Shown here: positions 22,810 to 39,466 of the stretch, in pieces | How the letters are laid out: each line of letters opens with the position of its first letter | Position numbering within the stretch: the stretch's first letter is position 1 | NCBI RefSeq assembly: GCF_000143415.4 | Contig: NW_003314316.1 | Coordinates: 260,120 to 324,119 of the forward strand | Origin: Selaginella moellendorffii | Taxonomy: Eukaryota; Plantae; Lycopodiophyta | Reading direction: 5' to 3' | Length of the DNA: 64,000 bases | The notes under the pieces: model-generated | Told to the model about the DNA's origin: nothing | Database searches by the model: none | The model's input: the letters and a program-made list of their open reading frames with translations, nothing else | Position numbers and translations under genes: made by a program

Positions 22810-23806
22810 TCCCAAGAACGCCAGAGAAATGAGATCATTCGCCAGCCATGCTACATTTGCAATCCCCTACTCAGTATCAGCAATCCGACAATTTGCTGCT
22901 GCCATAGTCTGCCTCACACACAACGAAATTTAGCACAGATCGGGTGGTGCCAAGACGAAACCAACACGCAGGAATGCCAGCAATCTCCCTCAGCTCCACC
23001 GTGCACAGCGCTCCAATGCTACAGTGCCGATGGAGCGATCGCTGGCCAATTGGAAGGAAAGAATTGGGAAACCCAGGCCTTGATGCTCCAACAGAAGAGA
23101 AGCAACGAAGAATACCTGGTGGTTTGTGATCGTATGAACGAGCATACTAGCATTGCAACATCGTGGCCGTATCTGTGACTCGGGCAATGAAGGAGCATTT
23201 ATGTGGTAGAGCTGCCGTCAGCGGCAATCAGTCCAAGAATCGCTTTGGATTAAATTTCTTGTTTACACTCCCAATCCCATGGAGAAATCTTTGTGGCGCA
23301 AGCTCTTGTGGATTGTCTCATTGTTTCTACTGAATTTTATTTGACTACCCAATTGATATATGTGTCTCCACTTGTTTTTGCCTAGGCAATCAGAGGTATT
23401 CTCAAAGGCTGTAATCAAGGTGGCTGCAAGCTTTGTGGAGGAAGGCTATGGAGATAGTTACTGATCACCGTTGTTTTCTCTTTTTTTGTTTCTAAAAGGT
23501 AAATTGAAGGTGGTGGAAAATGCGGACTTGTATCCAGCTGTATGAGATGAGTGGCTGTGCCGTTGGCAGCTTGAACAAGGACGCATTGACCGACGGCAGT
23601 AAAATTGTGTCAGGAGATGTTCTCATTGGTTTGCCATCGACAGGGCTTCACTCCAATGGCTTCTCTAAGGCTCGTAGGTTTGCACTCGACAGAAGAGTGG
23701 GACTTTTGATGGATCTTTAGAGCGAGACCTTGCATGGAGTGATGAACAAGAGCATAGATAAAAGATTTTGCAAAAGGTCCGGGCAATTGCATGCCAAGTT
23801 GGATGG
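22810..23806 (+). pseudogene. Mosaic pseudogene: copy of the NDR2/FUT1 intergenic region and FUT 5' end, with an inserted PurM fragment
   Basis: 22810-~23370 resembles 16462-~17230; ~23375-23689 resembles 31895-32218; ~23690-23806 resembles ~17258-17410; multiple indels and stops. Confidence 0.85.
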
Positions 23807-24889: not shown

Positions 24890-26733
24890 ATGGAGAAATC
24901 TTTGTGGTGCAAGTTCTTGTGGACTACCGCACTGTTTCTACTGATTTTTCTTTGGATCGGCTACCCAAGTGATAGATGCGTGCTCAATTTCGCGGTCAAC
25001 TTTAGCAAAACGCATCAAGAAAGAGTGAGAGATGTGGTGGATCTTTGGAGCGAGACCCTGTATGGAGTGATGAACAAGAGCGTCAATCTAGATCTCGATT
25101 CACTCTCTTATGCTCCTCACATCCAAGATTGCAAAAGGTCTGGTGAATTGCATGCTAAGTTGGATGGTCGTGGAGAGAATGGCAAATGGCCCCCTTGGAG
25201 CTTGTCGCAGGGATCAAGTGTTGATAGTGGAGGGGTGGAGATTATAATGGATCAAATGTTCTACATCAACAAAACAGTTCCCAGTCTCAACATTCCTTGG
25301 GTATATAAATCTATTGATTGTTCTAACTTTAAAACTTTCTTGTTCCTAGATTCTTGGTGGTGATGACGAGAATCTCCCCTTGACAAGGCTTGTCCAGCAT
25401 GATTTGTGGCTGAATCAACACCCCAAAGATTGCAGCAATGCAAGGTTTCTCATGGCAGACTGGTTTAGCCAGCAAACACCCACCTCCATCGGCGTTGGCT
25501 CGGAGCTTGTATATCTCTCGGCTATGTTCTCGATGGCTGTCATGCAAAAGAGGGTGTTGGTGACCAAGGCATATCACGGGGCAAATCACTCGGGATGTTT
25601 GGGTAATAATACTTTTTCTCTCTTGAGGTTTAGAATCTTTTTAAATTCTTATCATATAGGATTGGATCGTGCGAGATGGTCTTGCTATTTCCTTCCTGAG
25701 GCTTCGAGTGAATGTATTGCCCGGGCTTTGGAGCTTTCCTCGCAAAAGGAACCTTGGGATCAAGGCCTTCTTGTAAATTTTGATTATAATCACGGGTGGA
25801 CTGTCCCAAGGTTCGTAGCAGAGTTGATATAATCGAAATCACAGCGTCTTCCTCTTTCCTGCTGTGAAGGTTGTGGGGTGAGCCTTGGAAAAGAATCGAA
25901 CCATCAGTGGAACTCGATGGGGTTCTTATGGCAGATGTCAATGGTAACAACGAAAGAAGGTGGTGGAGAGCTCAGGTTTATTAGATTTAATTAACTCCTC
26001 ATTAGTTTATACTAATAAGTGTGTTTCAGGTGTTCCGATATCTCATGCGTTTCCCGAGCGAGTATCTTTGCAATCTACTAAACGTAGCCCGGAATGAGGC
26101 ATTTGGAGAGGCAGCAGCAAGATTGATACTAAAGAATTACCCACAAGGCAATTGGAACTCTAACAATCATAGCTCTCATAGTGAGAGTCCCATGGAAGCA
26201 AATGTTTGGAGCAGCTATGGACCATGGATTCCACGGCCTTTAGTGAGCATTCACGTGAGACAAGGAGATAAAAACATCGATATGGAAGTCCATCCCTTTA
26301 AAGACTACATGAAGCTCGCCATGAGGCTGCGCAAGAAATTCCCACACATAAATTGTGTGTGGCTTTCAACAGAAATGCAGGTAACAAATGGTTTATTTCT
26401 TTCTCAGATACTTATTTATATTGTTTTTCTTTCTCATTTATATTTTGCTAGAATGTAATTGATGAAAGCAAGGAGTATGAAGGATGGAATTTTTTCTTCA
26501 CCGATATAAAGAGACAGGTTGGAGCAACAAGCATGGCCGAGTACATGGCTTCACTGGGAAAGAGGAAAAATTTTGAGAATAGTTATGTCAATCTCTTGAT
26601 GGCTGCTGACTGTGATTTCTTTGTGGGGGTTTTGGGGTCAACTTGGAGCTATGCCATTGACTGCTTGAGGATGACCAGCGGAAAAGTCAAGGCTGGCTTC
26701 CTCACAGTCAACCCCGTGAATTACTTACTGTGA
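24890..26733 (+). CDS. Alpha-1,6-fucosyltransferase-like glycosyltransferase, copy 2
   Basis: Near-identical to copy 1 in exons and exon structure (SIHVRQGDK, DCDFFVGVLGSTW); shares the 3' flank. Confidence 0.8.
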
Positions 26734-26927
26734 TAACTTTATTTGTCACTTGAAAGAAGAAAAACCAGGAGAAAAATCAGCCCCGCTCACAAGAGCTTCT
26801 TCAATAGCGCTGGGAGCCAAGGCATGATCAGTGGAAAAGTTCTGGTCGATTTCTTCGCTTCCAATCCTGTGTGATGCACAGAGAGAGAGAGCTTCTCAGC
26901 ATAAAAATTCGAAGTTTTTCTAAGTTC

Positions 26928-29383
26928 TTACCTCTGATCAGTGTCCATTGATAGATTCACCATTGTTGAACTTGAATCTGGAAGATCTGGAGGCTGCAGC
27001 GAGTCTCGCCTTTGTTGTGGGTGCAGAGGAGATGCAGCTATGCCCCTTTCATTCAGCAAGCTTCTGAAGAATTCAAGCCTGGGAGCAGCATTTTCAGGAC
27101 CCAAACTTGTGACTTTGGATGGGCTCCAAAGCCTCTCTAAACCAAAAAAACAAAAAAACAAAAAGCATAATAATCAGACAAGAACAAGATAGAAAACATG
27201 TAGAGAAAGCTTGCCTGCAGCTGCTGCTGCTCTTGGCCATATTTTTTGCTGGATATTGCTTGCATCAACTTGTTCACCCCACATACAAACTTCGCCTCCA
27301 ATAATAAGCTCCTGTTCAATTTCGCTGGTGACGTTGTCGAATGGCTCCTTGGAGTAAAACTTCTCCCATGGTATCTCAATATGATCCAAATACCACGAAG
27401 ATTGCTCGCTGACTATGCACTTGAGGCCCGACTCGACAACATCGGGAGCGATTTGAGGTCCCCACCTGATTATAGGATGTTCTTCAAAGGTGAGAGGAAA
27501 TGTGTCAAAGAAGTATTTACCAGTTGTGGACAATTGTCTTCCTTGACAAACTTTGTCCAAATTTTTCAAATGGTTCTTGCCTGTAAAAGGACCACGAGAT
27601 AATGCGATCGAAGATCAAAAGCATGTTACCAGTTGACGGGAACATAACCATGTTTCATGGCCAGCTTTTGGACTTGGAGTACAAAAAACTCGTACGCTTC
27701 TGCTGCTGTAAAATTATGCTCTACAAGCCTGATTTTCAAAGAGTTGATAAACTATAAACTTCAAGTAGCATACCAGTTATTTGTGGGCCTCGCAATTTGC
27801 CAGCAGCCTGTTTAACACCATATAAGAAAAAAACTAAAAACTTGAGGATGGTTTTTGCTTACTTGTGTCGACTTCGTCTCCGCCGATATGCAAAAGCTCG
27901 AATGGAAAAACCTTTGAAAGATCTATATAATCTCGAGTTTACAAGGATTGCAATCCATAATCAAAGAAGATCATACCAGAAAATATGCCATCTATCACCT
28001 CAAAGGTGAACTCTTTGCTGATATCCAATGGTGTTGTGCAGCTTTCAGAAGGCCATAGCTCAGGATATCCAACTCCCCTACGCTAGAAAAATCATAAAAA
28101 CGAATGATAACTTTAATCTGGAGAGAGAACAAGCTTACCATGAGCGAGCGTGTCCAGGAACATCAATCTCTGGCATGACATGCACACCTCTCAATCGAGC
28201 ATACCTGTCAAATGCACAGATTGATCGTTTTCTTTTTGAAAGTATGGCTTACTCGACTATTGCTTTTGCATCATCGAGGTTGTAGCGCTGAGTGATTGAG
28301 AAGGAGCCTTTCCAAAGCTCTGGAAAAGATGGAATCTCCAAAGGGAAGGATTCCTCGTCGACAACATGCCAGTGCAAAACATTCTGGAAAGGAAGAAAAG
28401 AAGAGCTCAGATTTGATCGATAGAACTCAAACTCACGAGCTTCGCATAGGCCATGGAGTCGATCACATTCTCGATCGTCTTTAGTGGTAAGTAGTGTCGA
28501 GCAGTATCTGGTAAGAGAAAAAGAATGAATTTACGTCAAGAACAACAAGACAACCACAGAAAAACTGAAACTTTACCAATCAGAAGCCCTCTATAAAAAA
28601 ATCTGGGCTCATCGAGAATGTCCCACGGACAGTCCTGTACAAGAATCTCTCTCGCGAGAACATCGTAGCTGCAAATCTGGCTAAAGGTCTAGAAAAAAAA
28701 GGAGACAAATGAATAGAGCCATCCCACACACATTTTTTTTGGTCTTACCTCGAGTCCTCGAAGAGCTCCATAAACAGTTCTTGCCTTGAATGAATGGAAC
28801 GCAAGAAAATCAGGCGATAAGCCTCACGATCTTTCCTTACCTGGAGCAATGCCGCCTTGGAATTGAGAGGATCAGGGATTTGGAGGCGGTAGGATTCATC
28901 CACGCCAAGATGGAGCTGCCGAAAAACTCATTACAAACACCCTAGGCAAATAGTAAAGTCACTCACGCTTTGGTTGAACGACTTAAGATCGATGCAAAGT
29001 TCGTCAAGAACAAACTTCTCTGGATCAATCTTTGCTGGAGTTTTCAGCTTTCGCTGCCTGAGAATCAGTGAGGTATAGCGATCAATTCCTGCTTGCAAGA
29101 CTTCCAGATTTTCCCCAGCCGCTGATGAAAAACTTATAGAAAATTGCCTGGACAGTGTCATCAAAATAGAGCCTTGGGAGAGATTTCTTGGAGCTGGCCA
29201 GATGAGAACGCTAGTGTTGCTGCTGCGATCATCCCAATTTGTCAAAGTGATTGAAGAGGCAACATGCCAGAAAGAAGACTTGCTCCTTTTGCTCCAGTAA
29301 GTGTTGGTGACAATGGATGAGAGTATGAGAGCTAAAATTCCTATCACAAAAATCTTCCTCAATCTTTTGCTGCTCCACAACAT
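26928..29383 (-). CDS. Beta-N-acetylhexosaminidase (GH20), copy 1
   Basis: N-terminal TM anchor; IWPAPRN; RGLLIDTARHY; HWHVVDEESFP; PEIDVPGHARSW; catalytic LHIGGDEV; GGEVCMWGE; WPRAAAAAERLWS. Confidence 0.93.
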
Positions 29384-29964
29384 TGTCGCGTTTTTGTGGT
29401 ACTTGTGTTCCTGCCAAACTTAAAGGTTGAGTGCTCGTTTGGAAAAGTCCATCAAGAAGATTCCTTTTTAGTGATATGCTTCGTTGACAATGTTACATTG
29501 AGATTATTAAATTGAAGGCTGGCTATTGCTGACACTTTGGCAAACATTTATATACATAATAATCAGTTTATTAAAAAAACTTGTGTTTGTAACAGTTTAG
29601 TCTTAATCTTAATTCAAACAACAGCAATCTTCCTTTGATCAAAATCGCAGTTGAAGAATCCATCTTTCTTGAGAACGCAGTGCCTGGGCTCATAGATCTC
29701 TCCAAGAGCTCTTCACTGATGCCACGCATTGCGCAAAAGGCTGCCAAATCGGCAACATGCAAACGTGAATAAATTCTTTCGTCACCAAGTGGTAGAAATA
29801 AACCTCGCTGGAGCTGCGAGTGCTTCCGTGAGATCGAGAAGAGCACTGGATCTCTCTCATGAGACGAAAATTCGGCTTCTTGTGATTTCTTGTTTCGCGG
29901 TATATAGTTCAAGGGTTCCATTTCAAGAGCTAGATCAAAAATTGAGAGAAGAGAGTATCCAGCG

Positions 29965-31255
29965 ATGGCGGCACAGCTCTCTTGCATCGCCTACATTGCG
30001 CGTCCCAGGATCTTGGCAACAGGAGGCGATGCGTGGCGTCTACAATCCGTCGCAGCTTGTCCGAGCATTCCCGGAGTTTCACTCTTGGACGCCGGCGATG
30101 GCTCCTCCTTTCTCGTCACTCGCGCTGTCGGCACCACCTCCAAGCTCCTCGTCGCGCGGGAGATGAGAAACTTGGAGGTCATTGGCTACGATCTTGTAAG
30201 TTTCTTTCTTTCGCGCTTTCTTTAGATCCCTCCGGATCGAGGCGATCAAGATCTTTTCTCTCATCTTCCAAACGATTCTTGGATCCAGGTTGCGAGCGCT
30301 CTCAACGGTCTCGTCGCGAGTGGAGCAAAGCCGAGCTTCTTTTCCCACACCGATGCTTTGGGCGACAACGAACGCGAGATGGATGAGCTTCTCTCCGGGG
30401 TCACAAGCGCATGCATCGCCGGGAATTGCCCCATCAACCGCGGAAGTGGAGTAATCTTCAAGAACTTCGCTGCTCTAGAATGATCATCTCTAACACGACT
30501 AAATGTTTCACAGAAGAAAACTCCGCGCGGAGTTCTTGCCGGCATGGCCTTGGGCGAAGTTCGCAAGGAGCTCTTGCTGGATGGACGTGGGATCCAAGAC
30601 GGGGACTGGCTCATCGGCCTCGAGACCCAAGCGCTCCACTCCCAGAAGTTTGGAAGCGTCCTCAGGTGATAAAACTCTCGCTCGATCAATGGACTTTTGT
30701 TCTTGACACTGAGAATCTCCTGCATCGATCGATCAGCCTCGCAAAGGAGCATGGACGACTCAAGAGCGTCGGCAAGGCCATCCTCACTCTACCTCGCATT
30801 TACGTATCCACTGTAAGTTAGAACACTCTAAGAAACGTTAAAAGATCTTACTTGGATCATCTATCTAGGTGCTTGATCTGATCGCCAAGAAGAAAATCAA
30901 GGCTGCCGCTCACTTCTCCTCCGCGGGGATCACGGATGCCATCGCCAAACTTCTGGGACCTCGCGAGTTTGGCGCGAGCATACGAAGGCTCGGCTCCTGG
31001 CCACTCCCGCCAGTGCTCGTGTGGATCAAAGAGGTAGAGTTTCTCGAGTCATAGTTTGATCTGATCGTTTGCTCCAAGCAGGCCGGGGATTTGAGCGACG
31101 AAGAAATGCTGGCAGCCTTCAACGTGGGACTGGAAATGGTGCTCGTTTGCGACAGTGCTCGCGGCTATGAAGTCCTGGATCTCGTTCGCGGCGCTCATCA
31201 CATTGGCAGTGTGATCGCTGGCAGTGGAATCATCATAGACAAGCTGCTCAACTAG
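29965..31255 (+). CDS. Highly divergent stand-alone PurM/AIR-synthetase-like protein (probable pseudoenzyme)
   Basis: Spliced frame is open and aligns to the PurM fold (IGYDL|VASALNGLVASGAKP, DGDWLIGL..ALHS, PRIYV, W.LPPV..WIKE|AG, AFNVGLEMVLV); catalytic motifs replaced. Confidence 0.75.
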
Positions 31256-31341
31256 AGCTCTCTTCCGATATCGATTCCACACTCGATATAAAGAAGTTTT
31301 TTGAAGAAGTTTTTGGGGTTTTAGCACACTAGCTAGGGTTT

Positions 31342-34200
31342 ATGCGAAGCATGGAGAGCTTCCAGTCGATCGCGTCGCTCCCGCCGCTTGCCCGCGTTGA
31401 TCCTTCCGCTGGATTCAGCCGCCGCAAGGAATGGCGCCTCCCAGCGCTCACGTACAAAGACGCCGGGGTCGACATTGACGCTGGATCGGAGCTCGTCCGG
31501 AGGATCGCGGCCAAGGCGCCGGGGATTGGAGGATTTGGGGGATTATACTCTGTTGGTATGTTCTTTGTGGCATTTCCTTGTGATGGAATGATTTTCTTGG
31601 GACAATCTAGGTGAGGATTCTTATGAGGTTGTCGGGACGGATGGAGTTGGGACAAAGCTCAAGCTTGCGTTTGAGATGAATGCTCACGACACGATTGGCA
31701 TCGACTTGGTACGTAGATTTCTTTAGAGTTTTTGGGAGCTTTGAACAGCTTTCGTTTCCAGGTTGCCATGAATGTGAACGATATTGTCACCACTGGAGCA
31801 AGGCCGATGTATTTCCTGGACCAGTTCTCCACTGGTCATTTAGACACGGAGATCGCAGAAAAGGTACGAGTGATCGATGTCATTCATTGATTTATTTTTG
31901 CGTAGGCGATCAGAGGTATTCTCGAAGGCTGCAATCAAGGTGGCTGCAAGCTTTCTGGAGGAAAGGTACGAAGATAGTTACTGATCACCGATTCTTTTCT
32001 CTTTCCTTGTTTCTAAAAGGTAAATTGAAGGTGGTGGAAAATGCGGGCTTGTATCCAGATGGAGTGCTGTACGAGATGAGTGGCTGTGCCGTCGGCAGCT
32101 TGAACAAGAACGCATTGATCGACGGCAGTAAAATTGTGTCAGGAGATGTTCTCGTCGGTTTGCCGTCGACGGGGCTTCACTCCAATGGCTACTCTCTGGC
32201 TCGCAGGTTTGCACTCGATTTTCCGCTCACCAATAAGACTGTCAAATTTTTTCTCTTTTGGTTTTCCGTTTAGAATACTAAGCATGTCAAATTTGTCTCT
32301 GAAAGACCAGCTTCCGGGAGCAGATGTAACCATTGGAGAGGCTTTGATTGTTCCAACAAAAATTTATGTCAAGCAGGTACGAGAAGAATGTGGTAATGCT
32401 CGTTTTTAATCTTTTGTTTTCTTCTTTTGCCACTGTGTAGGTTCTGGACATAATTTCTAAAGTTGAAGTGAAGGGCATGGCTCATATTACCGGAGGGGGA
32501 CTGACTGACAACTTACCAAGGATTTTTCCTGCTGGTCTTGGCGCAAAGATCAGAATGGGTTCCTGGCATGTTCCCCAAATATTTAACTGGCTCAAGGACG
32601 TAAGCGATGAGTTTATAAAGCTAATCTCTGCAGCATGACGTTTTGTTTTTAAAGGCTGGCAATGTGGAAGAAGAAGAAATGCTTCGCACGTTCAACATGG
32701 GAATAGGAATGGTTCTCGTGGTGGAGCCTCGTGTTGCGGATAAAATTCTTGAAGAATACGCACCGTCTTATCTTATTGGAACGGTTATCCAAGGAAAAGG
32801 CGTGGTGTATGACCGTTTGAGCACTGCCTCGTCTGATCCATGCAAAGGCCCTGGAGTCACTAATGAGGGTGTCGCAACTCTCGACGCTGATTCGCAACAG
32901 GAGCTTCTGCAAAGACTTGCAGGACAGCCTCCGCGTCTCTTCCCGATTGGTAAATAATCTTCTGTTATTTACACTGACCTCTAGTTTTCATCTGGTAGGC
33001 GATGAATTCTCAGTTAGCAGAGCCGAACGAGTCGATGAGAAATTGCAGTTGGCTCTCGAGATGCAAGTTCACAACACTATTGGCATCGATCTGGTAGTGT
33101 TTGTTCTGGATTCCGCGTTTACACGATTAATTCAAGTTTCTTGGCAGGTTGCGGTAAACGTTAATAGTATTGTGACTACTGGGGCAACTCCCTTGAGTTT
33201 TGTGGACTATTTCTCCACCAGCCATTTAGACGTGGACGTAGCAGAACAGGTTGAACAAGTTTTGCTTGTTAAAACTACTGGAAAATCGAATGCTTTGCTG
33301 ACTGTTCAGGTTATCGAGGGAGTTGTTCAAGGCTGTATTCAGGCGGAGTGCGGCTTGCGAGGAGGGGAAGTACGTCAGCTGTTTCTGACTTGCGAATGGC
33401 GAGCTAAATCTCTTTTACAGACGGCAGAAATGCAAGGCTTTCACGCCGAGGGAGAGTACATGCTCAATGCCTACGCATCCGGTAGAGTAAAGCAGAGTGC
33501 TCTAATCGACGGCAGCACCATCGCAGCCGGAGATATCCTGCTCGGGCTGCTCTCCAGTGGCATTCACTCGCATGGATTTTCTATGGTTGACAGGTAAGGA
33601 CAAGCTCTCATATCTTTATAAGCTCTAATTCTCTTTTGTTGGTTAGCATCTTGAAGAATGCGAATGCATCTTTGAAGGGCAAGCTCCCGGGCTCTGAAGT
33701 CACGATCGGAGAAAGCTTGCTCATGCCAACCAAGATTTATGTGAAGCAGGTTCAGAGAAAGCCTCTGGCTCTTCTTCAGTTCTCATTAGGAAAGAATAAC
33801 TAACGTTTTTCTCATTTTGCAGGTGCTGGAAATGATCTCTTGCAGCGGAGTGAAGGGAATTTCCGACGTTACGGAAGGCGGACTCACTGGCAGCATACAA
33901 AAAATTCTACCATCGGGATTGGGGGCGACTGTCAGAACGAGTTCATGGGAAGTTCCTCGCATATTCAAGTGGCTGCAAGAGGTACACTCCAATGGGTTTT
34001 GCTTTGCTTTCCCTTGATGCTTGCCGCCTCTGGAGCAGGCGGGAAGCATGGAACCGGAGAAAGCTTTCGGAACCTTTAACATGGGAGTAGGCATGGTTTT
34101 GGTGCTGGATCCCTGCGCCGTAAAGAAAATCCTTTCCACAAACAAGGAGTGCGTTGTCATGGGCGAAATCGTGCAGGGCGCCCGAGTGGTGTACGAATAA
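31342..34200 (+). CDS. PUR5: Phosphoribosylformylglycinamidine cyclo-ligase (AIR synthetase) with two tandem PurM domains in one chain
   Basis: Transit-like N-terminus; domain A has [41 protein letters not shown]; no stop after GKGVVYD; linker leads into domain B (IGIDL|VAVNVNS, GGE|TAEM, HSHG, TFNMG); stop at 34198-34200. Confidence 0.88.
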
Positions 34201-34847
34201 TAATAGGTAAGCTTGATACATTTCACTCCGGAGCTGACAAAGTTTCACCTCTCACATCCGCCAGGGACCTGTGCTGTGATCTTGTCTCTCACCTCTGCAT
34301 AGATCTCTCCGCAATCCAACTCGTTAAACCAGAGGCAAGGAAAGAGATTCGTGATCGGCGTGTGCTTCCTGATGATCACAGAGTTTTCAGGAACGTCACT
34401 CACCAGGAGGAGCGGTTGTACGGGACGCGACTATTGCGGTGGCTCTCCTCTAATGATCGCGTCAAGTTCATGGCCATCTTGTCAATTTCTTCAAAATCTG
34501 GATGAGATCAACCATTAGTTGCACCTTCCCGTCGATCCAGATCGAGAACTTTGGAACGAGCCTGTCACGATTGTCCTGGAGCATACATGGAGATCCTCCA
34601 CACTCCCATGTCCCCGTCTTCCTCCATGTATCGCTTTCAAGGTTGGCTTATTGCGAAGCAAACGATCTTGTCGTACAATGATTCCTTTGAGATTCCGTGT
34701 GCACGCAAGAAATAAAAACTGGTCTCTACCTAAAATCTAGCGGTAAACAGGAAAGATTATGGTAGAGTTAGGTAAACACAATAGGTGTTGGTCACTCATG
34801 AATGATTATCCAGTCATTTAATCAAAATTGATTGTTTGAACAGATAT

Positions 34848-37240
34848 TCATAGTGTTGAGTGTGGAGAATCTGGAGGCTTGGACGAGCCTTCTTCTTTTG
34901 ATTTCACTGGAGAAGCAGCTATTCCTCTTTCATTCAGCAGGCTTCTGAAAAATTCAAGCCTAGGAGCAGCATTTTTGGGACCCAGACCTGTGACATTAGA
35001 TGGGCTCCAAAGCCTCTCTGACCAAAATAAAAATTGTTAGCCAAGAAAAATATATCAAGCAAATAGAGTGAAGCTAGCTTGCCTGCCGCCGCTGCTGCCC
35101 TTGGCCATATTCTTTGTTGGATATTGGCTGCATCAACTTTCTCACCCCACATACAAACCTCACCTCCAATAATCAACTGCTGTTCTTTGTGGCTGGCAAT
35201 GTTATCATATGGTTCCTTTGAATAAAACTCCTCCCATGGTATATCAATGTGATCCAGGTACCATGAAAATTGCTCGCTAACTATACTCTTGAGGCCCGAG
35301 CTGACAGTGTTGGGAGGAATTTGAGTGCCCCACCTGAATAGCCATTTGAACAATCTGAGTTAGAGAGACAACCCCTTTTGATAAGTTACCAGTTGTGAAC
35401 AATTGTTTTCCTTGACAAACTTGGTCCAAATTTTTCAAATGGTTCTTGCCTAGAGAGAGCAAAAATTAATGGAATCCGACATGGCTAATCTCCTTACCAG
35501 TTGACAGGAAGGTACCCATGCTTCAAGGCCAGTTTTTGCACTTGAAGCACAAAAAACTCGTAGCCCTGTGAAGGTGTTAAATTGTGCTTTCTCAGCCTGC
35601 TTCAGACAGTTGGATGTTTAGTAAAACCGAATCTAACGTACCAGTCATTTACAGGTTCTGTGATTTCCCAGCATCCTGTTAGCAGAAAATAAGCTGACAA
35701 TCACCAAGAAAATTTGCTGCTTACTAGTGTTAACTTCGTCTCCTCCTATATGAAGCAGCTCAAATGGAAACACCTTTGAGAGATCTAGGCAGCATAGAGT
35801 TGACACAAGGATTTTGATTCAATATAAAACATGCTCATACCGGAAAAAATGCCATCTATCACCTCAAAAGTGAAATTCTTACTGATGTCCAGAGGTGTTT
35901 TGCAGTTTTGAGAGGGCCATAGCGCAGGATATCCAACTCCCCTAAACGCAAGTAAATCTATTAATTTACAATGAAGGCAGAAGAAGTTTACCATGAGCGA
36001 GCGTGGCCTGGGACATCAATCTCTGGCATGACATGTATACCTCGCAATCGAGCATACCTGTATAAGAATAAAAGCATAGGATATTTGTGCTCTCTTTGAA
36101 AGTATAGCTATAGCTTACTTGACTATAGCTTTTGCATCATCGAGGTTGTAGCGCTGAGAGATAGAGTAGGAGCCTTTCCAAAGCTCTGGAAACGATGGAA
36201 TCTCCAAAGGGAAGGACTCCTCGTCCACAACATGCCAGTGCAAGACATTCTGGAGGCAAAGAAGTTAGAAAGGGGCTCGGCTCATATATAAGGGATAGAG
36301 AAATTGGAACTCACAAGCTTCGCGTAGGCCATGGAGTCGATCACATTCTCTATCGTCTTTAATGGCAAGTAGTGTCGAGCAGTATCTGGTAAGCGAGTGA
36401 AAAATAATTAGAAGCCGTTGCCTGTTCTAAAGAAAAAAAGTTCTCACCAATCAAAAGGCCTCGATATGAAAATCTAGGCTCGTCAAAAATGTTCCATGGG
36501 CAGCCTTGCAAAAGCACAGCTCTTTCGACAGCATCATAAGTGCAAATCTGGCTAAAAGTCTATAAAAAATGCAAATAGTTTAGCAAATCCAAAACTTTTG
36601 TTTCAAGCCTACCTCGAGTCCTCGTAGGGCCCCATAGACAGTTCTTGCCTTGGATGAGCATAGAAAGGAGGTGAATCAGCGCTCAACTTCAAAGATTTTG
36701 CTTACCTGGAGCAATACTACCCTTGAATTTGAAGGGTCGGGGACTTGGAGGCGGTACGATTCATCTACACCAAGATAGAGCTGCCAAAATACAGAAAGAG
36801 AACCTAGAAAAATAAGTTATAATTTTTGTCTCTCTCACGCTTTGGTTGAATGACTTGAGCTCGATACGAAGTTCGTCCAAAACAAAATCTGGTGGATTCT
36901 TTTTCGCTGGAATCCTTAGCTTTCTCTGCTTGAGAATCAATACCGTGTAGCGATCAATCCCTGCTTGCAAGACTTTTAAAGTTCTGGGAGGAGTTATGGC
37001 AAACTTTGTGGACAGTCTCATGGAAATCGATCCCTTGGAGACGTTTTTGGGGGCTGGCCATATGAAAACTCCTGTGCTGTTGTGATCATCCCAGTTCACC
37101 AAAGACCTTGAAGGGCCAACATGCCAGAAAGAATCACCACTACTCTTACTCCACAAAATGTTAGTGATTATTATGAATAAAAGCACAAGAGCTATAACCC
37201 CAAGCACAAAAATCTTCCTCAGTCCGTTGCTCCCAAACAT
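34848..37240 (-). CDS. Beta-N-acetylhexosaminidase (GH20), copy 2
   Basis: Paralog of 26928-29383 with the same exon structure; LHIGGDEV; GGEVCMWGE; ERLWS. Confidence 0.93.
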
Positions 37241-37593: not shown

Positions 37594-39466
37594 ATGAAAA
37601 GAAATCTCCAGTGTCCGAAGGATTCCCTGAAATGGCTCCTGTTTTGGATCTTGTCCTTGAACTTGGTTGTTTTGATTAGTTTCAGAATGAACTGGATGAA
37701 ACAGGATCGCCAAGAGGCTAGTGTAACACCAACACCCGCACCAAGATCAATTAATTCCTCGACCTCGGCTGCGTCGAGCAGAGTAAAACTCCTGGTCGAT
37801 CTGTGGAGCAGAGATCTGCAGTCGAGAGTGAGCGGTGCAACTCCTCCCGAGGTGACGATCAATGCACCGCACATCCAGGATTGCAAGCGATGCAGCGAGG
37901 AGACTGCAGCGTTTGATCGCAGGAAGGATCCATCCTGGAAGGGATTTTACCAGCAAAAAGAGGAGCTTGACAGGAATCCAGAGACAAGCATCAGCACCGT
38001 TCCATGGGTAAGTTCTCTTGTAAGGTTCTTCTCAGATCGGGTAGTCTTTCTCGTTTTCTTGGTTTTCTCAGTAGCCTTTTGCTGCTCTTGGACAGGTCAT
38101 TAGCGGTGATGACGATAATCTCCCGTTAACGCGACGCGTCCAGCGTGATATTTGGTTGCACCAACACCCGAAAAACTGTACCGATGCGAGATTTCTTCTC
38201 GCACTTTGGCACCACGACGAGACGCGCGACTCGGTAGGAGCTGGATCCGACATGGTGTCAATGGCCGGAATGCTTGGAGCTGCGCTAATACAAGGCCGGG
38301 TTTTCATTACCAAGGATTACCACGGTGCCAGGCACAAAGGATGCACAGGTTTCAAAACTCTTTTATATCTCGGGCTGATGTTTTCAAAGTGTTAAAATAA
38401 TGCCAGGATCCAATCACGCTCGCTGGTCGTGCTATTTTGTTCCCGAGGCTTCTGAGGAGTGCATGGAAAGGGCATTGCGGCTTATTGACCAAAAACAGGC
38501 CTGGGACGAGGGAATTATCAAAGAGTTTAGTGGCGATCAATGGAATGGTGATATTCCAAGGTGAGAAAAAAGAGTTTTTTTCATACAGTAACTTAGTATT
38601 ATCTGGTTTTTAGTTTTTGGGGAGAGCCTTGGAAAGCAATGCGACCAACTGTGGGCGTAAAAGACAAGCTCATGACAAATTACCACGCAAATCATCGAAG
38701 GTGGTGGAGAGCTCAGGCAAGTTTCTTATTCATCAAATGGTAAGCTAATGATCTAGAATTAACGTATACAGGCACTTCGCTATCTCACACGATTTCCAAG
38801 TGAGTATCTGTGCAATCTTTTAAACAATGAACGACATAGGGCCTTTGGGGAAGAAGTTGCAAAACTGGTGCTTAAAACCCTTGGCACTGAATGGCCGCAT
38901 GCAAGAAATGAGAGTAAGCGTAATCCCAGTAATCCCATGGAAGAACATGTGTGGAGTGACTATGGACCTTGGATGCCGCGGCCTCTGTTAAGCATTCATG
39001 TAAGACAGGGTGACAAAGCCAGCGAGATGAGAGTAGTCTCTTTTGACGAATACATGAATCTCGCCAATGTCCTCCGGAAGAGATTCCCACACGTAAGAAA
39101 TGTGTGGCTTTCCACGGAAATGCAGGTAAGAAAGCCATTGACGAAGATTTGAAATCACAAAGCTTTTGCATGGTTTAGAACGTCGTGGATGAATCCAAGG
39201 AGTACAAAGGCTGGAAGTTTTATTACAGTGATGTTCCAAGGCAAGTTGGAACGATCAGGATGGCGGAGTATATGGCGTTGCTTGGAGACAAGCAAGCGTT
39301 CGACACGGCCTTTATAAACTTGGTCATGGCGGCCGAGTGTGATTTCTTTGTGGGAGTGTTGGGCTCGACTTGGAGCTATATAATTGACGACTTGAGGATG
39401 ACCAGCGGCAAACTTAAGGCTGGCTTCCTCAGTGTTAACTCTATCAATGGCCTACTTCGAAAATAA
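37594..39466 (+). CDS. Alpha-1,6-fucosyltransferase-like glycosyltransferase, copy 3 (more diverged)
   Basis: TM anchor; PLTRRVQRDIWLHQHP; RPLLSIHVRQGDK; WLSTEMQ; ECDFFVGVLGSTW; GC-AG intron near 38717. Confidence 0.8.

What the first reader, a model, noticed from the sequence alone, without database searches (positions are those of the whole stretch)
31342..34200. Single-chain PurM-PurM with complementary loss of active-site motifs (intramolecular pseudo-dimer)
Seen: two full PurM domains in one frame with identical intron positions. Domain A keeps [24 protein letters not shown] and HITGGG, but has FLDQ (for LDY) and GGKVVEN (for GGETAEM). Domain B has lost all of the first set ([20 protein letters not shown]) but keeps VDY and GGETAEM. 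Established: PurM is a homodimer with nucleotide sites at the subunit interface; internal PurM duplications are known in large PurL and in dipteran trifunctional GART, whereas typical plant PUR5 has one domain. Inference: the DY and GGETAE strands act in trans, so A+B reconstitute exactly one active site and the second has decayed. This would be a convergent, plant-lineage origin of the fused asymmetric architecture and a natural map of cis versus trans residues.
Basis: partly seen in the sequence, partly recalled or inferred. Interest (0 to 1): 0.88.

Follow-up and report, generated by a model that had tools for sequence, protein, structure and literature searches.

The report
Fused double AIR synthetase in spikemoss
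A spikemoss gene encodes two copies of the purine enzyme AIR synthetase joined in one chain, each copy having lost the catalytic pieces that the other keeps, so together they can probably form only one working site; spiders and an insect-like group reached the same split independently.

Summary
Window 31342-34200 (+) is a 15-exon GT-AG gene. Its 686-aa product is identical to Selaginella moellendorffii XP_002982756.2.

- **Transcript.** Stranded RNA-seq shows all 14 introns spliced. This includes the 49-nt intron that removes the stop near 32955, so A and B are one transcript and one reading frame.
- **Motifs.** A keeps TDGVGTK, ND, HSNG and HITGGG but has LDQ and GGKVVEN. B keeps VDY and GGETAEM and has lost the rest.
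- **Origin.** A and B carry the seven intron positions of the canonical spikemoss PUR5 and branch beside it.
- **Fold.** An AlphaFold model (pTM 0.82) overlays both halves of single-chain PurL as one rigid body.
- **Convergence.** The same motif split recurs in spider GART and an insect-like clade. That supports one composite site built from A's cleft plus B's DY and GGETAEM strands.

Caveats:
- A canonical PUR5 with every motif exists elsewhere in this genome.
- B evolves nearly neutrally between the two haplotypes (pN/pS 0.61, against 0.03 for A), although it was constrained over the long term.
- A published residue assignment disagrees in part, and catalysis is untested.
- No orthologue was found in another species.
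- The first-stage scan noted the same fused gene on another piece of this genome, which is the second haplotype.

Verdict: a new variant of a known kind.

The parts
31342..34200 (+). Coding region of the fused PurM-PurM gene: 15 exons, 686 aa, with the stop TAA at 34198-34200 followed by TAA and TAG. Exons: 31342-31555, 31611-31708, 31762-31863, 31906-31965, 32031-32206, 32274-32376, 32441-32599, 32655-32949, 32999-33093, 33148-33249, 33310-33369, 33421-33593, 33647-33749, 33823-33981, 34039-34200.
   Evidence: Model. It is identical to XP_002982756.2. All introns appear as RNA joints.
31342..31452 (+). N-terminal presequence, aa 1-37. It is shorter than the roughly 66-aa presequence of the canonical PUR5, and its targeting is unknown.
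   Evidence: The transcript 5' end lies near 31333.
31453..32810 (+). PurM domain A, aa 38-356. It keeps the G1 loop (31522-31542), GTDGVGTK (31634-31657), ND in Dx4GAxP (31774-31806), HSNG (32178-32189) and HITGGG (32483-32500). It has FLDQ (31813-31824) and GGKVVEN (31957-32042, split by intron 4).
   Evidence: It scores 530 bits against a plant PurM profile. pN/pS is 0.03 between haplotypes.
32811..32942 (+). Linker, aa 357-400. It consists of read-through past the former end of A plus the decayed first-exon remnant of B, with no ATG and the G1 loop deleted.
   Evidence: pLDDT is below 50 for residues 360-381. pN/pS is 0.68.
32950..32998 (+). Junction intron (49 nt, GT..AG, phase 1), homologous to intron 1 of PUR5. 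It contains the in-frame stop that older gene models used.
   Evidence: The joint is seen in 4+4 raw RNA reads and in contigs of two runs. The old 401-aa models end in PIGK.
32943..34197 (+). PurM domain B, aa 401-686. It keeps FVDY (33199-33210) and GGETAEM (33361-33432, split by an intron). It has SRAERVDEK (33016-33042), NS in place of ND (33160-33192), HSHG (33565-33576) and DVTEGG (33865-33882).
   Evidence: It scores 404 bits against the plant profile. pN/pS is 0.61. Stop-free survival under neutral evolution has p about 0.001.
34207..34264 (+). 3'UTR intron (58 nt), immediately after the triple stop.
   Evidence: Joint 34204>34263 (cut +2), seen in reads of X20 and X21 and in a contig of X5.
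29965..31255 (+). Copy Z, a third tandem PurM-like unit. It has 6 exons and an intact 319-aa ORF in this haplotype. It is 35% identical to A, has lost every catalytic motif, and keeps 5 of the 7 PUR5 introns.
   Evidence: RNA depth is zero in four runs. There is a 2-nt gap in the other haplotype and pN/pS is 0.59. The other haplotype is annotated as a 330-aa AIRS_C product.
23386..23681 (+). Frameshifted pseudogene fragment of an A-type copy (exons 4-5, 81-90% amino-acid identity to A). It already carries the GG(R)/VVEN change.

Best explanation
This is an expressed Selaginella moellendorffii paralogue of plastid-type AIR synthetase (PUR5/PurM).

How it arose (shown): two tandem gene copies fused. 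The stop of the first copy and the start of the second were lost. The remnant of the second copy's first exon now serves as a linker, and it still splices at the ancestral intron-1 site.

How it most likely works (inferred): the two halves fold on each other like the two subunits of a PurM homodimer. Single-chain PurL has the same arrangement.

In PurM each of the two symmetric sites is composite. One subunit gives its interdomain cleft, which carries the TDGVGTK G2 loop, the Asp of Dx4GAxP, HSN and HITGGG. The partner gives two interface strands, LDY and GGETAEM. Domain A keeps the first set and has lost the second. Domain B keeps the second set and has lost the first.

The chain should therefore have one complete site, A's cleft plus B's strands, and one dead site. 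The tether would also keep the defective A and B halves from pairing with, and inactivating, subunits of the canonical enzyme.

Shown: the gene structure, the single transcript, the motif pattern, the origin, the strong constraint on A, and the recurrence of the same split elsewhere. Inferred: the packing (a prediction), the cis/trans roles, and that the composite site still makes AIR.
For: - **Transcript and protein.** All 14 introns are seen as joints in stranded raw reads. The model equals XP_002982756.2.
- **Origin.** The seven intron positions and phases are shared by A, B and the canonical gene. A and B share derived residues at sites that are invariant in plants, for example S138N, S145T, A157S, V247I and F304L in P0164 numbering.
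- **Fold.** The AlphaFold2 model has pLDDT 81 and pTM 0.82. It overlays single-chain PurL across both halves: 2hs3 at Z 22.8, 459 residues, rmsd 4.2 A, model residues 69-679; 3viu with 482 residues; 9nal with 503 residues.
- **Recurring motif split.**
  - In Trichonephila GART P0025, copy 1 keeps GGETAEM only. Copy 2 keeps TDG, ND, HSN and HIT and has LEA and GAEINE.
  - In P0137, copy 1 keeps ND, LDY and GGETAEM. Copy 2 keeps TDG, ND, HSN and HIT and has LSY and no GGE.
  - In P0024 and P0038, copy 1 has lost TDG and HSN, and copy 2 has DGK or DGQ.
  - The spider pair and the Selaginella pair are each other's sisters, so those duplications are independent.
  - Under this partition every one of these chains keeps exactly one full site. 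Under the alternative partition none does.
- **Constraint.** A has 1 nonsynonymous and 9 synonymous differences between haplotypes, pN/pS 0.03. B is constrained over the long term: dS is above 2 and dN is 0.35, and 286 codons carry no stop, p about 0.001 under neutral simulation.
- **Literature.** PMC2978367 puts G2, the sulfate site, His620 and His680 around one pocket and shows the active-site cavity at the dimer interface. PMC8449271 puts the ND Asp and the HIT His on one monomer and DY and GGE on the other. PMC13013826 describes the pseudo-twofold PurL domain with one active and one vestigial site.
Against: - No enzyme assay exists, and I had no coordinates with which to measure distances between motifs.
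- PMC8449271 assigns the TDGVGTK Asp48 and the HSN Asn175 to the same monomer as DY and GGE. If that is right, the A+B site is incomplete.
- Between the two haplotypes B has 8 nonsynonymous and 4 synonymous changes, pN/pS 0.61. This is not distinguishable from neutral (p 0.49), and it includes D595N at the former HITGGG His position.
- A canonical PUR5 with every motif exists in the genome (P0164), so nothing forces this paralogue to be active.
- Both A and B are accelerated: branch lengths 1.2 and 2.1-2.4, against 0.3 for the canonical enzyme.
- No orthologue was found in any other species.
- Across all 151 plant-invariant columns, losses in A and B are not complementary: 14 are lost in both against 9.2 expected. 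Only the catalytic motifs are complementary.
- The G1 loop is kept in the first copy of the chain in all three degenerate lineages, whatever its motif class.
Confidence: 0.6

Rival explanations
1. The fused protein is a catalytically dead or repurposed paralogue, for example a pseudoenzyme, a regulator, a binder of a purine intermediate, or an enzyme with an altered substrate. The complementary motif pattern would then be a leftover from an earlier stage. The canonical PUR5 makes all the AIR.
For: - A canonical PUR5 with all motifs is present.
- Both halves are accelerated.
- B is near neutral between haplotypes.
- B has lost the G1 loop.
- If the residue assignment in PMC8449271 holds, no complete site remains.
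- The gene was found only in S. moellendorffii.
Against: - A is under very strong purifying selection with every cleft motif intact, pN/pS 0.03.
- B retains exactly GGETAEM and DY while losing motifs that are at least as conserved.
- The same split occurs in animal GART proteins, which look like the main AIRS of those animals. This was not checked here.
Confidence: 0.22
2. Domain B is a translated, slowly decaying passenger. Domain A works with another partner, either the canonical PUR5 subunit, which would supply DY and GGETAEM in trans, or another A.
For: - The contrast in pN/pS between B (0.61) and A (0.03) is significant, Fisher p 0.011.
- The linker is disordered in the model.
- A lacks only what a canonical partner could give.
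Against: - B's reading frame and all seven of its introns are intact in both haplotypes, although dS to A is above 2.
- Stop-free survival under neutral evolution has p about 0.001.
- The model packs A on B with pTM 0.82.
- An A:A pair would lack Glu and Tyr in both sites.
Confidence: 0.12
3. The fusion is an assembly or annotation artefact, and A and B are two separate genes or a gene plus a pseudogene.
For: Older gene models (EFJ16001.1 and EFJ07950.1, 401 aa) stop inside the junction intron.
Against: - Eight raw RNA-seq reads and two transcript contigs splice exon 8 to exon 9.
- Read depth is even across A and B, and no internal transcript start or end was reported.
- The B part has no start codon in its first-exon remnant.
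- The same structure is present in both haplotypes.
Confidence: 0.02

Closest known systems
Canonical plant PUR5 / bacterial PurM (AIR synthetase, EC 6.3.3.1), e.g. S. moellendorffii SELMODRAFT_92321 and E. coli PurM 1CLI
   Same: - Each half has the AIRS plus AIRS_C fold.
- Domain A overlays E. coli PurM at Z 39 and rmsd 1.6 A over 320 residues.
- The intron positions are the same as in the spikemoss PUR5.
- Identity to the canonical enzyme is 66% for A and 52% for B.
   Different: - There are two domains in one chain instead of a homodimer.
- Neither domain has the full motif set.
- B lacks the Asp of Dx4GAxP.
- The N-terminal presequence is shorter.
PurL / FGAM synthetase synthase domain (PurM superfamily; single-chain pseudo-dimer with one active site and one auxiliary ADP site)
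   Same: - It is an internal duplication of a PurM-type unit with pseudo-twofold symmetry in which only one site is catalytic (PMC13013826).
- The model overlays 459-503 residues of PurL across both halves.
   Different: - PurL is ancient and universal, only 13-16% identical, catalyses a different reaction and carries extra domains.
- Here the duplication is lineage-specific and still recognisably PUR5, with the same introns.
Tandem AIRS domains in animal trifunctional GART. They are known in Diptera from my own recollection of the older literature. Here they were seen in a lepidopteran (CAH2048229.1), a spider (Trichonephila PRD27040.1) and unnamed Logan assemblies.
   Same: - Two AIRS units sit in one chain.
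- In the spider and in the P0137/P0024/P0038 clade the same motif classes are lost in complementary fashion.
   Different: - The animal proteins carry GARS and GARTfase domains and the Selaginella protein does not, so the NCBI name 'trifunctional ... adenosine-3' is a misnomer.
- In the animals the DY/GGETAEM-type copy comes first, and here it comes second.
- In the lepidopteran, P0010, P0154 and the chytrid P0181 both copies are intact.
Other enzymes with interface sites that became asymmetric after duplication: class III adenylyl cyclase C1/C2 pairs, and ABC transporters with one degenerate nucleotide site (from general knowledge, not tested here)
   Same: Composite sites are built from two subunits. 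After duplication, complementary losses leave one consensus site and one degenerate site.
   Different: The folds and the chemistry are unrelated. The comparison is only an analogy of evolutionary logic.

Membership tests
PurM / AIR synthetase family | N-terminal AIRS (PF00586) plus C-terminal AIRS_C (PF02769) domains | tested here: met
   Both halves meet this. Exon pieces hit AIRS and AIRS_C. The precomputed architecture of the haplotype-2 product is AIRS, AIRS_C, AIRS, AIRS_C.
PurM / AIR synthetase family | Closest solved structures and sequences are AIR synthetases | tested here: met
   The N-terminal half of B hits 1CLI at E 5.5e-18. The model against 9jzw and 1cli gives Z 39 and rmsd 1.6 A. 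Both units lie inside the plant PurM clade with support 96/99.
PurM superfamily | Signature Dx4GAxP with the metal/ATP-binding Asp | tested here: not met
   A meets it ([10 protein letters not shown]). B does not ([10 protein letters not shown], Asp to Ser). The chain as a whole therefore has one signature, not two.
PurM / AIR synthetase family | Complete catalytic motif set (G2 TDGVGTK, ND, LDY, GGETAEM, HSN, HITGGG) within one polypeptide domain | tested here: not met
   Neither A nor B has the full set, and together they have each motif exactly once. The canonical P0164 has all of them.
PurM / AIR synthetase family | Converts FGAM and ATP to AIR | not testable with these tools
   This needs an enzyme assay or purM complementation.
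Single-chain PurM-type pseudo-dimer (PurL-like architecture) | Two PurM-type units of one chain packed through their N-domain sheets with pseudo-twofold symmetry | tested here: met
   This is met at the level of a prediction only. pTM is 0.82. Rigid-body overlay on PurL covers both halves: 459 residues of 2hs3, 482 of 3viu and 503 of 9nal.
Single-chain PurM-type pseudo-dimer (PurL-like architecture) | One catalytic and one degenerate site formed by residues of both halves | tested here: inconclusive
   The motif pattern and its recurrence in three lineages fit this. No coordinates were available, and PMC8449271 assigns two residues differently.
Trifunctional GART (the name NCBI gives this protein) | GARS (PurD) and GAR transformylase (PF00551) domains flanking AIRS | tested here: not met
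   The precomputed Pfam list for P0001 has only PF00586 and PF02769. The 686 aa are fully accounted for by the presequence, A, the linker and B.

The most novel reading that the evidence does not exclude
Tandem fusion of AIR synthetase followed by complementary loss of the same two motif classes has happened at least three times independently: in a lycophyte, in a spider and in an insect-like clade. Together these proteins would be a replicated natural complementation experiment. It defines which PurM residues act in their own subunit's site (G2 TDGVGTK, ND, HSN, HITGGG) and which act in the partner's site (DY, GGETAEM). That would correct a published assignment. It would also show, in a young and still traceable case, the route by which single-chain PurL arose from a PurM-like homodimer.
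Probability: 0.45. Interest if true: 0.72.

Novelty: new variant of a known kind. Interest (0 to 1): 0.62.

Why it matters
PurM-superfamily enzymes (PurM, PurL, ThiL, SelD, HypE) bind ATP at a subunit interface. For PurM itself the division of labour between the two subunits rests on a few ligand complexes and on modelling.

A young, intron-for-intron traceable fusion whose halves have lost complementary motif sets gives a direct genetic reading of which residues work across the interface. The same split in spider and insect-like GART proteins makes that reading more than an anecdote.

It is also a living intermediate for the accepted but unobserved step from a PurM-like homodimer to the asymmetric single-chain PurL.

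For the plant itself the importance is probably modest. A canonical PUR5 is present, the fused gene has so far been seen in one species only, and its second half is under weak constraint.

A practical point: the NCBI product name 'trifunctional purine biosynthetic protein adenosine-3' is wrong for this protein.

Tried and rejected
1. **Is the upstream copy Z part of the same transcript?** Its stop lies only 86 nt before A's ATG. I rejected this because RNA depth is zero over 29900-31222 and a transcript contig starts at 31333 directly after adapter sequence.
2. **Are losses complementary across all conserved positions?** I tested the 151 plant-invariant columns. They are not: 14 are lost in both halves against 9.2 expected. 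The complementarity claim is therefore limited to the catalytic motifs.
3. **Are there orthologues in other species?**
   - The representative search with B found only the protein itself below 1e-30.
   - Two word-index searches gave canonical plant PurM at no more than 54% identity as the next hits.
   - This absence is weak evidence. Transcript contigs that plainly hold the gene are not in its protein cluster, so the collection is incomplete.
4. **Primary structural literature.** The T. thermophilus PurM paper (doi 10.1093/jb/mvv107) is not held. No paper was found for the 2025-26 Pyrococcus/E. coli PurM entries.
5. **Prior descriptions.** Searches for a Selaginella PurM fusion or for degenerate tandem AIRS found nothing relevant.
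6. **Deep branching order of A, B and Z.** It is unresolved in the careful trees. Z has a branch length of 10 and was left out of the second tree.
7. **Measuring motif-to-motif distances.** This was not possible, because neither model nor PDB coordinates are exposed to the tools.

Full report
**What is there**

Reading 30800-34800 and listing ORFs showed PurM-like exon pieces in one orientation. I assembled a 15-exon model with GT..AG at every intron. Introns are 42-73 nt, and the CDS runs 31342-34200, 2061 nt, 686 aa.

A search of 1.84 billion representative proteins with a stop-free stretch of domain B returned one strong hit, P0001 (E 1.1e-78, 686 aa). P0001 is identical to my model at every residue.

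P0001 is XP_002982756.2 of Selaginella moellendorffii, which NCBI names 'trifunctional purine biosynthetic protein adenosine-3'. Its 90% cluster also holds the other haplotype's product, XP_002990906.2 (686 aa), and two older 401-aa models that stop in the junction intron.

A and B are 49% identical over 328 residues, and B lacks six residues of the glycine-rich G1 loop.

**One transcript**

I laid two stranded raw RNA-seq runs and two sets of transcript contigs on 29900-34300.
- All 14 introns appear as GT..AG joints.
- The junction intron 32950-32998 is seen in 4+4 raw reads and in contigs.
- One 1684-nt contig runs from 31333 (preceded by adapter) to 33591, which is from A's first exon into B.
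- All pairs have the first mate on the minus strand, as expected for a + strand RNA in a standard stranded library.
- Depth is similar over A and B, and no internal starts or ends were flagged.
- A further 58-nt intron (34207-34264) lies in the 3'UTR just after three consecutive stop codons.

**Surroundings**

Directly upstream lies a third PurM-like unit, Z (29965-31255). It is an intact 319-aa ORF of six exons, 35% identical to A, with every catalytic motif gone.
- It has no RNA depth in any of the four runs.
- It shows a 2-nt gap in the other haplotype and pN/pS 0.59.
- I take it for a silent, probably dying copy, and it is not part of the A-B transcript.

A frameshifted fragment of an A-type copy lies at 23386-23681. 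GH20 hexosaminidase-like genes flank the array as diverged direct repeats about 7.87 kb apart. The second haplotype has the same order of genes.

**Origin**

The genome has a canonical single-domain PUR5, P0164 (SELMODRAFT_92321, 389 aa), on another scaffold, with all motifs and a longer presequence.

Its seven introns lie at exactly the positions and phases seen in A and again in B. Exon lengths are 95/102/60/173/112/159/162 in the canonical gene and 95/102/60/173/103/159/162 in B. A and B are therefore DNA-level duplicates of a PUR5-type gene.

The trees agree with this:
- A, B and Z fall inside the plant PurM clade (96/99).
- Branch lengths are 0.3 for the canonical enzyme, 1.1-1.2 for A, 2.1-2.4 for B and 10 for Z.
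- A and B are sisters (71/86 in the careful tree). In the unit tree the grouping (canonical,(A,B)) has SH-aLRT 87/88.
- They share derived residues at sites that are invariant in plants.
- Synonymous divergence among A, B and the canonical gene is saturated (dS above 2), so the duplications are old.

No B-type or fused orthologue turned up elsewhere. The collection is demonstrably incomplete for this very gene, so that absence is weak.

**Selection**

Between the two S. moellendorffii haplotypes:

| Region | Synonymous changes | Nonsynonymous changes | pN/pS |
|---|---|---|---|
| A | 9 | 1 | 0.03 |
| Linker | 2 | 4 | 0.68 |
| B | 4 | 8 | 0.61 |

- The A-B contrast is significant (Fisher p 0.011), and B alone cannot be told from neutral (p 0.49).
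- One B polymorphism, D595N, sits at the former HITGGG histidine.
- None of the B polymorphisms touches FVDY or GGETAEM.
- Over the long term B was constrained. Its dN to the canonical enzyme is 0.35 against saturated dS.
- In 1000 neutral simulations to the observed protein divergence, only 0.1% stayed free of stops. That figure ignores indels and splice-site loss.

**Does it fold as a pseudo-dimer?**

I ran AlphaFold2 on an alignment of 13 tandem AIRS proteins. It gave mean pLDDT 81 and pTM 0.82. The low-confidence parts were the presequence, the G1 loop and linker residues 360-381. A pTM that high for 686 residues means the relative placement of the halves is predicted with confidence.
- Foldseek finds PurM chains covering one half (TMq 0.45, TMt about 0.9) and PurL chains covering more (TMq up to 0.57).
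- Rigid-body realignment puts both halves on single-chain PurL. T. maritima 2hs3 gives Z 22.8, 459 residues, rmsd 4.2 A, model residues 69-679. T. thermophilus 3viu gives 482 residues, and human FGAMS 9nal gives 503.
- PurL's synthase domain is the textbook pseudo-twofold PurM-type duplication with one catalytic and one vestigial nucleotide site (PMC13013826).

This is a prediction and not a structure.

**Do the retained motifs make one site?**

I could not measure distances, so I used two other lines of evidence.

*Literature.*
- For human AIRS, the G2 loop (GVGTK), the conserved sulfate, His620 and His680 lie around one pocket between the two domains of a monomer. The active-site cavity is drawn at the dimer interface, with Dx4GAxP as the ATP/Mg motif (PMC2978367).
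- For C. neoformans AIRS, one site is listed by analogy with the T. thermophilus complexes. Asp77 (ND), His231 (HITGGG) and Gly46 come from monomer A. Asp90/Tyr91 (DY) and Gly123/Glu124 (GGE) come from monomer B. Asp48/Val50 (TDGV) and Asn175 (HSN) are also assigned to monomer B (PMC8449271).

*Natural replicates.* The representative search also returned other proteins with two AIRS units in one chain.
- Both units are intact in a lepidopteran GART, in P0010, P0154 and P0163, and in a chytrid protein.
- In three sets the units are degenerate, always along the same line:
  - Spider P0025: copy 1 keeps GGETAEM. Copy 2 keeps TDG, ND, HSN and HIT and has LEA and GAEINE.
  - P0137/P0277: copy 1 keeps ND, LDY and GGETAEM. 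Copy 2 keeps TDG, ND, HSN and HIT and has LSY and no GGE.
  - P0024/P0038: copy 1 has lost TDG and HSN, and copy 2 has DGK or DGQ.
- The unit tree shows that the spider pair, the chytrid pair and the Selaginella pair are each internal sisters. The insect-like proteins share one older duplication.
- That gives at least three independent degenerations with the same partition.
- With {TDG, ND, HSN, HIT} acting in cis and {DY, GGE} in trans, each chain keeps exactly one full site. With the partition listed in PMC8449271, none of them keeps any.

**What does not fit**
- The N-terminal YKDxGVD segment and G1 loop are retained in the first copy of the chain in all three degenerate lineages. In Selaginella that is the cleft-type domain, and in the animals it is the strand-type domain. 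G1 therefore cannot be assigned from these data, and its role in the single site is open.
- Across all plant-invariant columns, losses in A and B overlap more than chance would give.
- Together with B's near-neutral recent evolution and the presence of a canonical PUR5, this leaves real room for a dead or repurposed protein.

**Verdict**

The best reading is an expressed, lineage-specific, single-chain PurM pseudo-heterodimer with one composite site (confidence about 0.6). The main rival is a catalytically dead or repurposed paralogue (about 0.2).

It is a new variant of a known kind. Its nearest relatives in kind are PurL's internal duplication and the tandem AIRS units of animal GART. The protein itself is in the public databases, under a misleading name. 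I found no description of the architecture or of the complementary decay in the literature available to me.

The first-stage scan also noted the same thing on another piece of this genome (s1-421932). This is the second haplotype that I examined as L001.

Noticed in passing
window 29965-31255 (+): A third tandem PurM-like gene, Z, lies just upstream. It has six exons and an intact 319-aa ORF with all catalytic motifs lost. No RNA was seen in four runs, and the other haplotype has a 2-nt gap. That haplotype is annotated as a 330-aa AIRS_C protein. It is probably a silent or dying copy.
   Followed up: partly
window 23386-23681 (+): A frameshifted fragment of an A-type PurM copy (exons 4-5 with their intron, 81-90% amino-acid identity to A). 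It already carries the VVEN change, so it was copied after A had diverged.
   Followed up: partly
window 27012-29371 and 34893-37231 (- strand genes); also 26188-26736 vs 38933-39463: Diverged direct repeats (74-95% identity) spaced about 7.87 kb apart are two GH20 hexosaminidase-like genes flanking the PurM array. A second repeat pair spaced about 12.7 kb apart matches the FUT8_N_cat-like genes annotated on the other haplotype. The locus has been duplicated repeatedly.
   Followed up: partly
window 34207-34264 (+): A 58-nt spliced intron lies in the 3'UTR six bases after the stop codon, which is followed by two more in-frame stops (TAA TAA TAG).
   Followed up: no
P0025 (Trichonephila GART), P0137/P0277, P0024, P0038 (Logan assemblies): Animal GART proteins with two AIRS units show the same complementary loss of motif classes as the spikemoss protein. 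The spider protein also has about 290 extra residues with a second GARTfase-like stretch between its two AIRS units.
   Followed up: partly
P0041 (Tribonema gayanum) and P0042: Stramenopile proteins carry an N-terminal sugar-kinase-like region followed by two AIRS units with a mixed, partly degenerate motif pattern (NN, DGETSEM, LQY, DTETSEL). This pattern does not sort cleanly into the two classes.
   Followed up: no
P0001 / XP_002982756.2: The NCBI product name 'trifunctional purine biosynthetic protein adenosine-3' is a misnomer. The protein has no GARS or GARTfase domain. The other haplotype's identical-length product is named phosphoribosylformylglycinamidine cyclo-ligase.
   Followed up: yes
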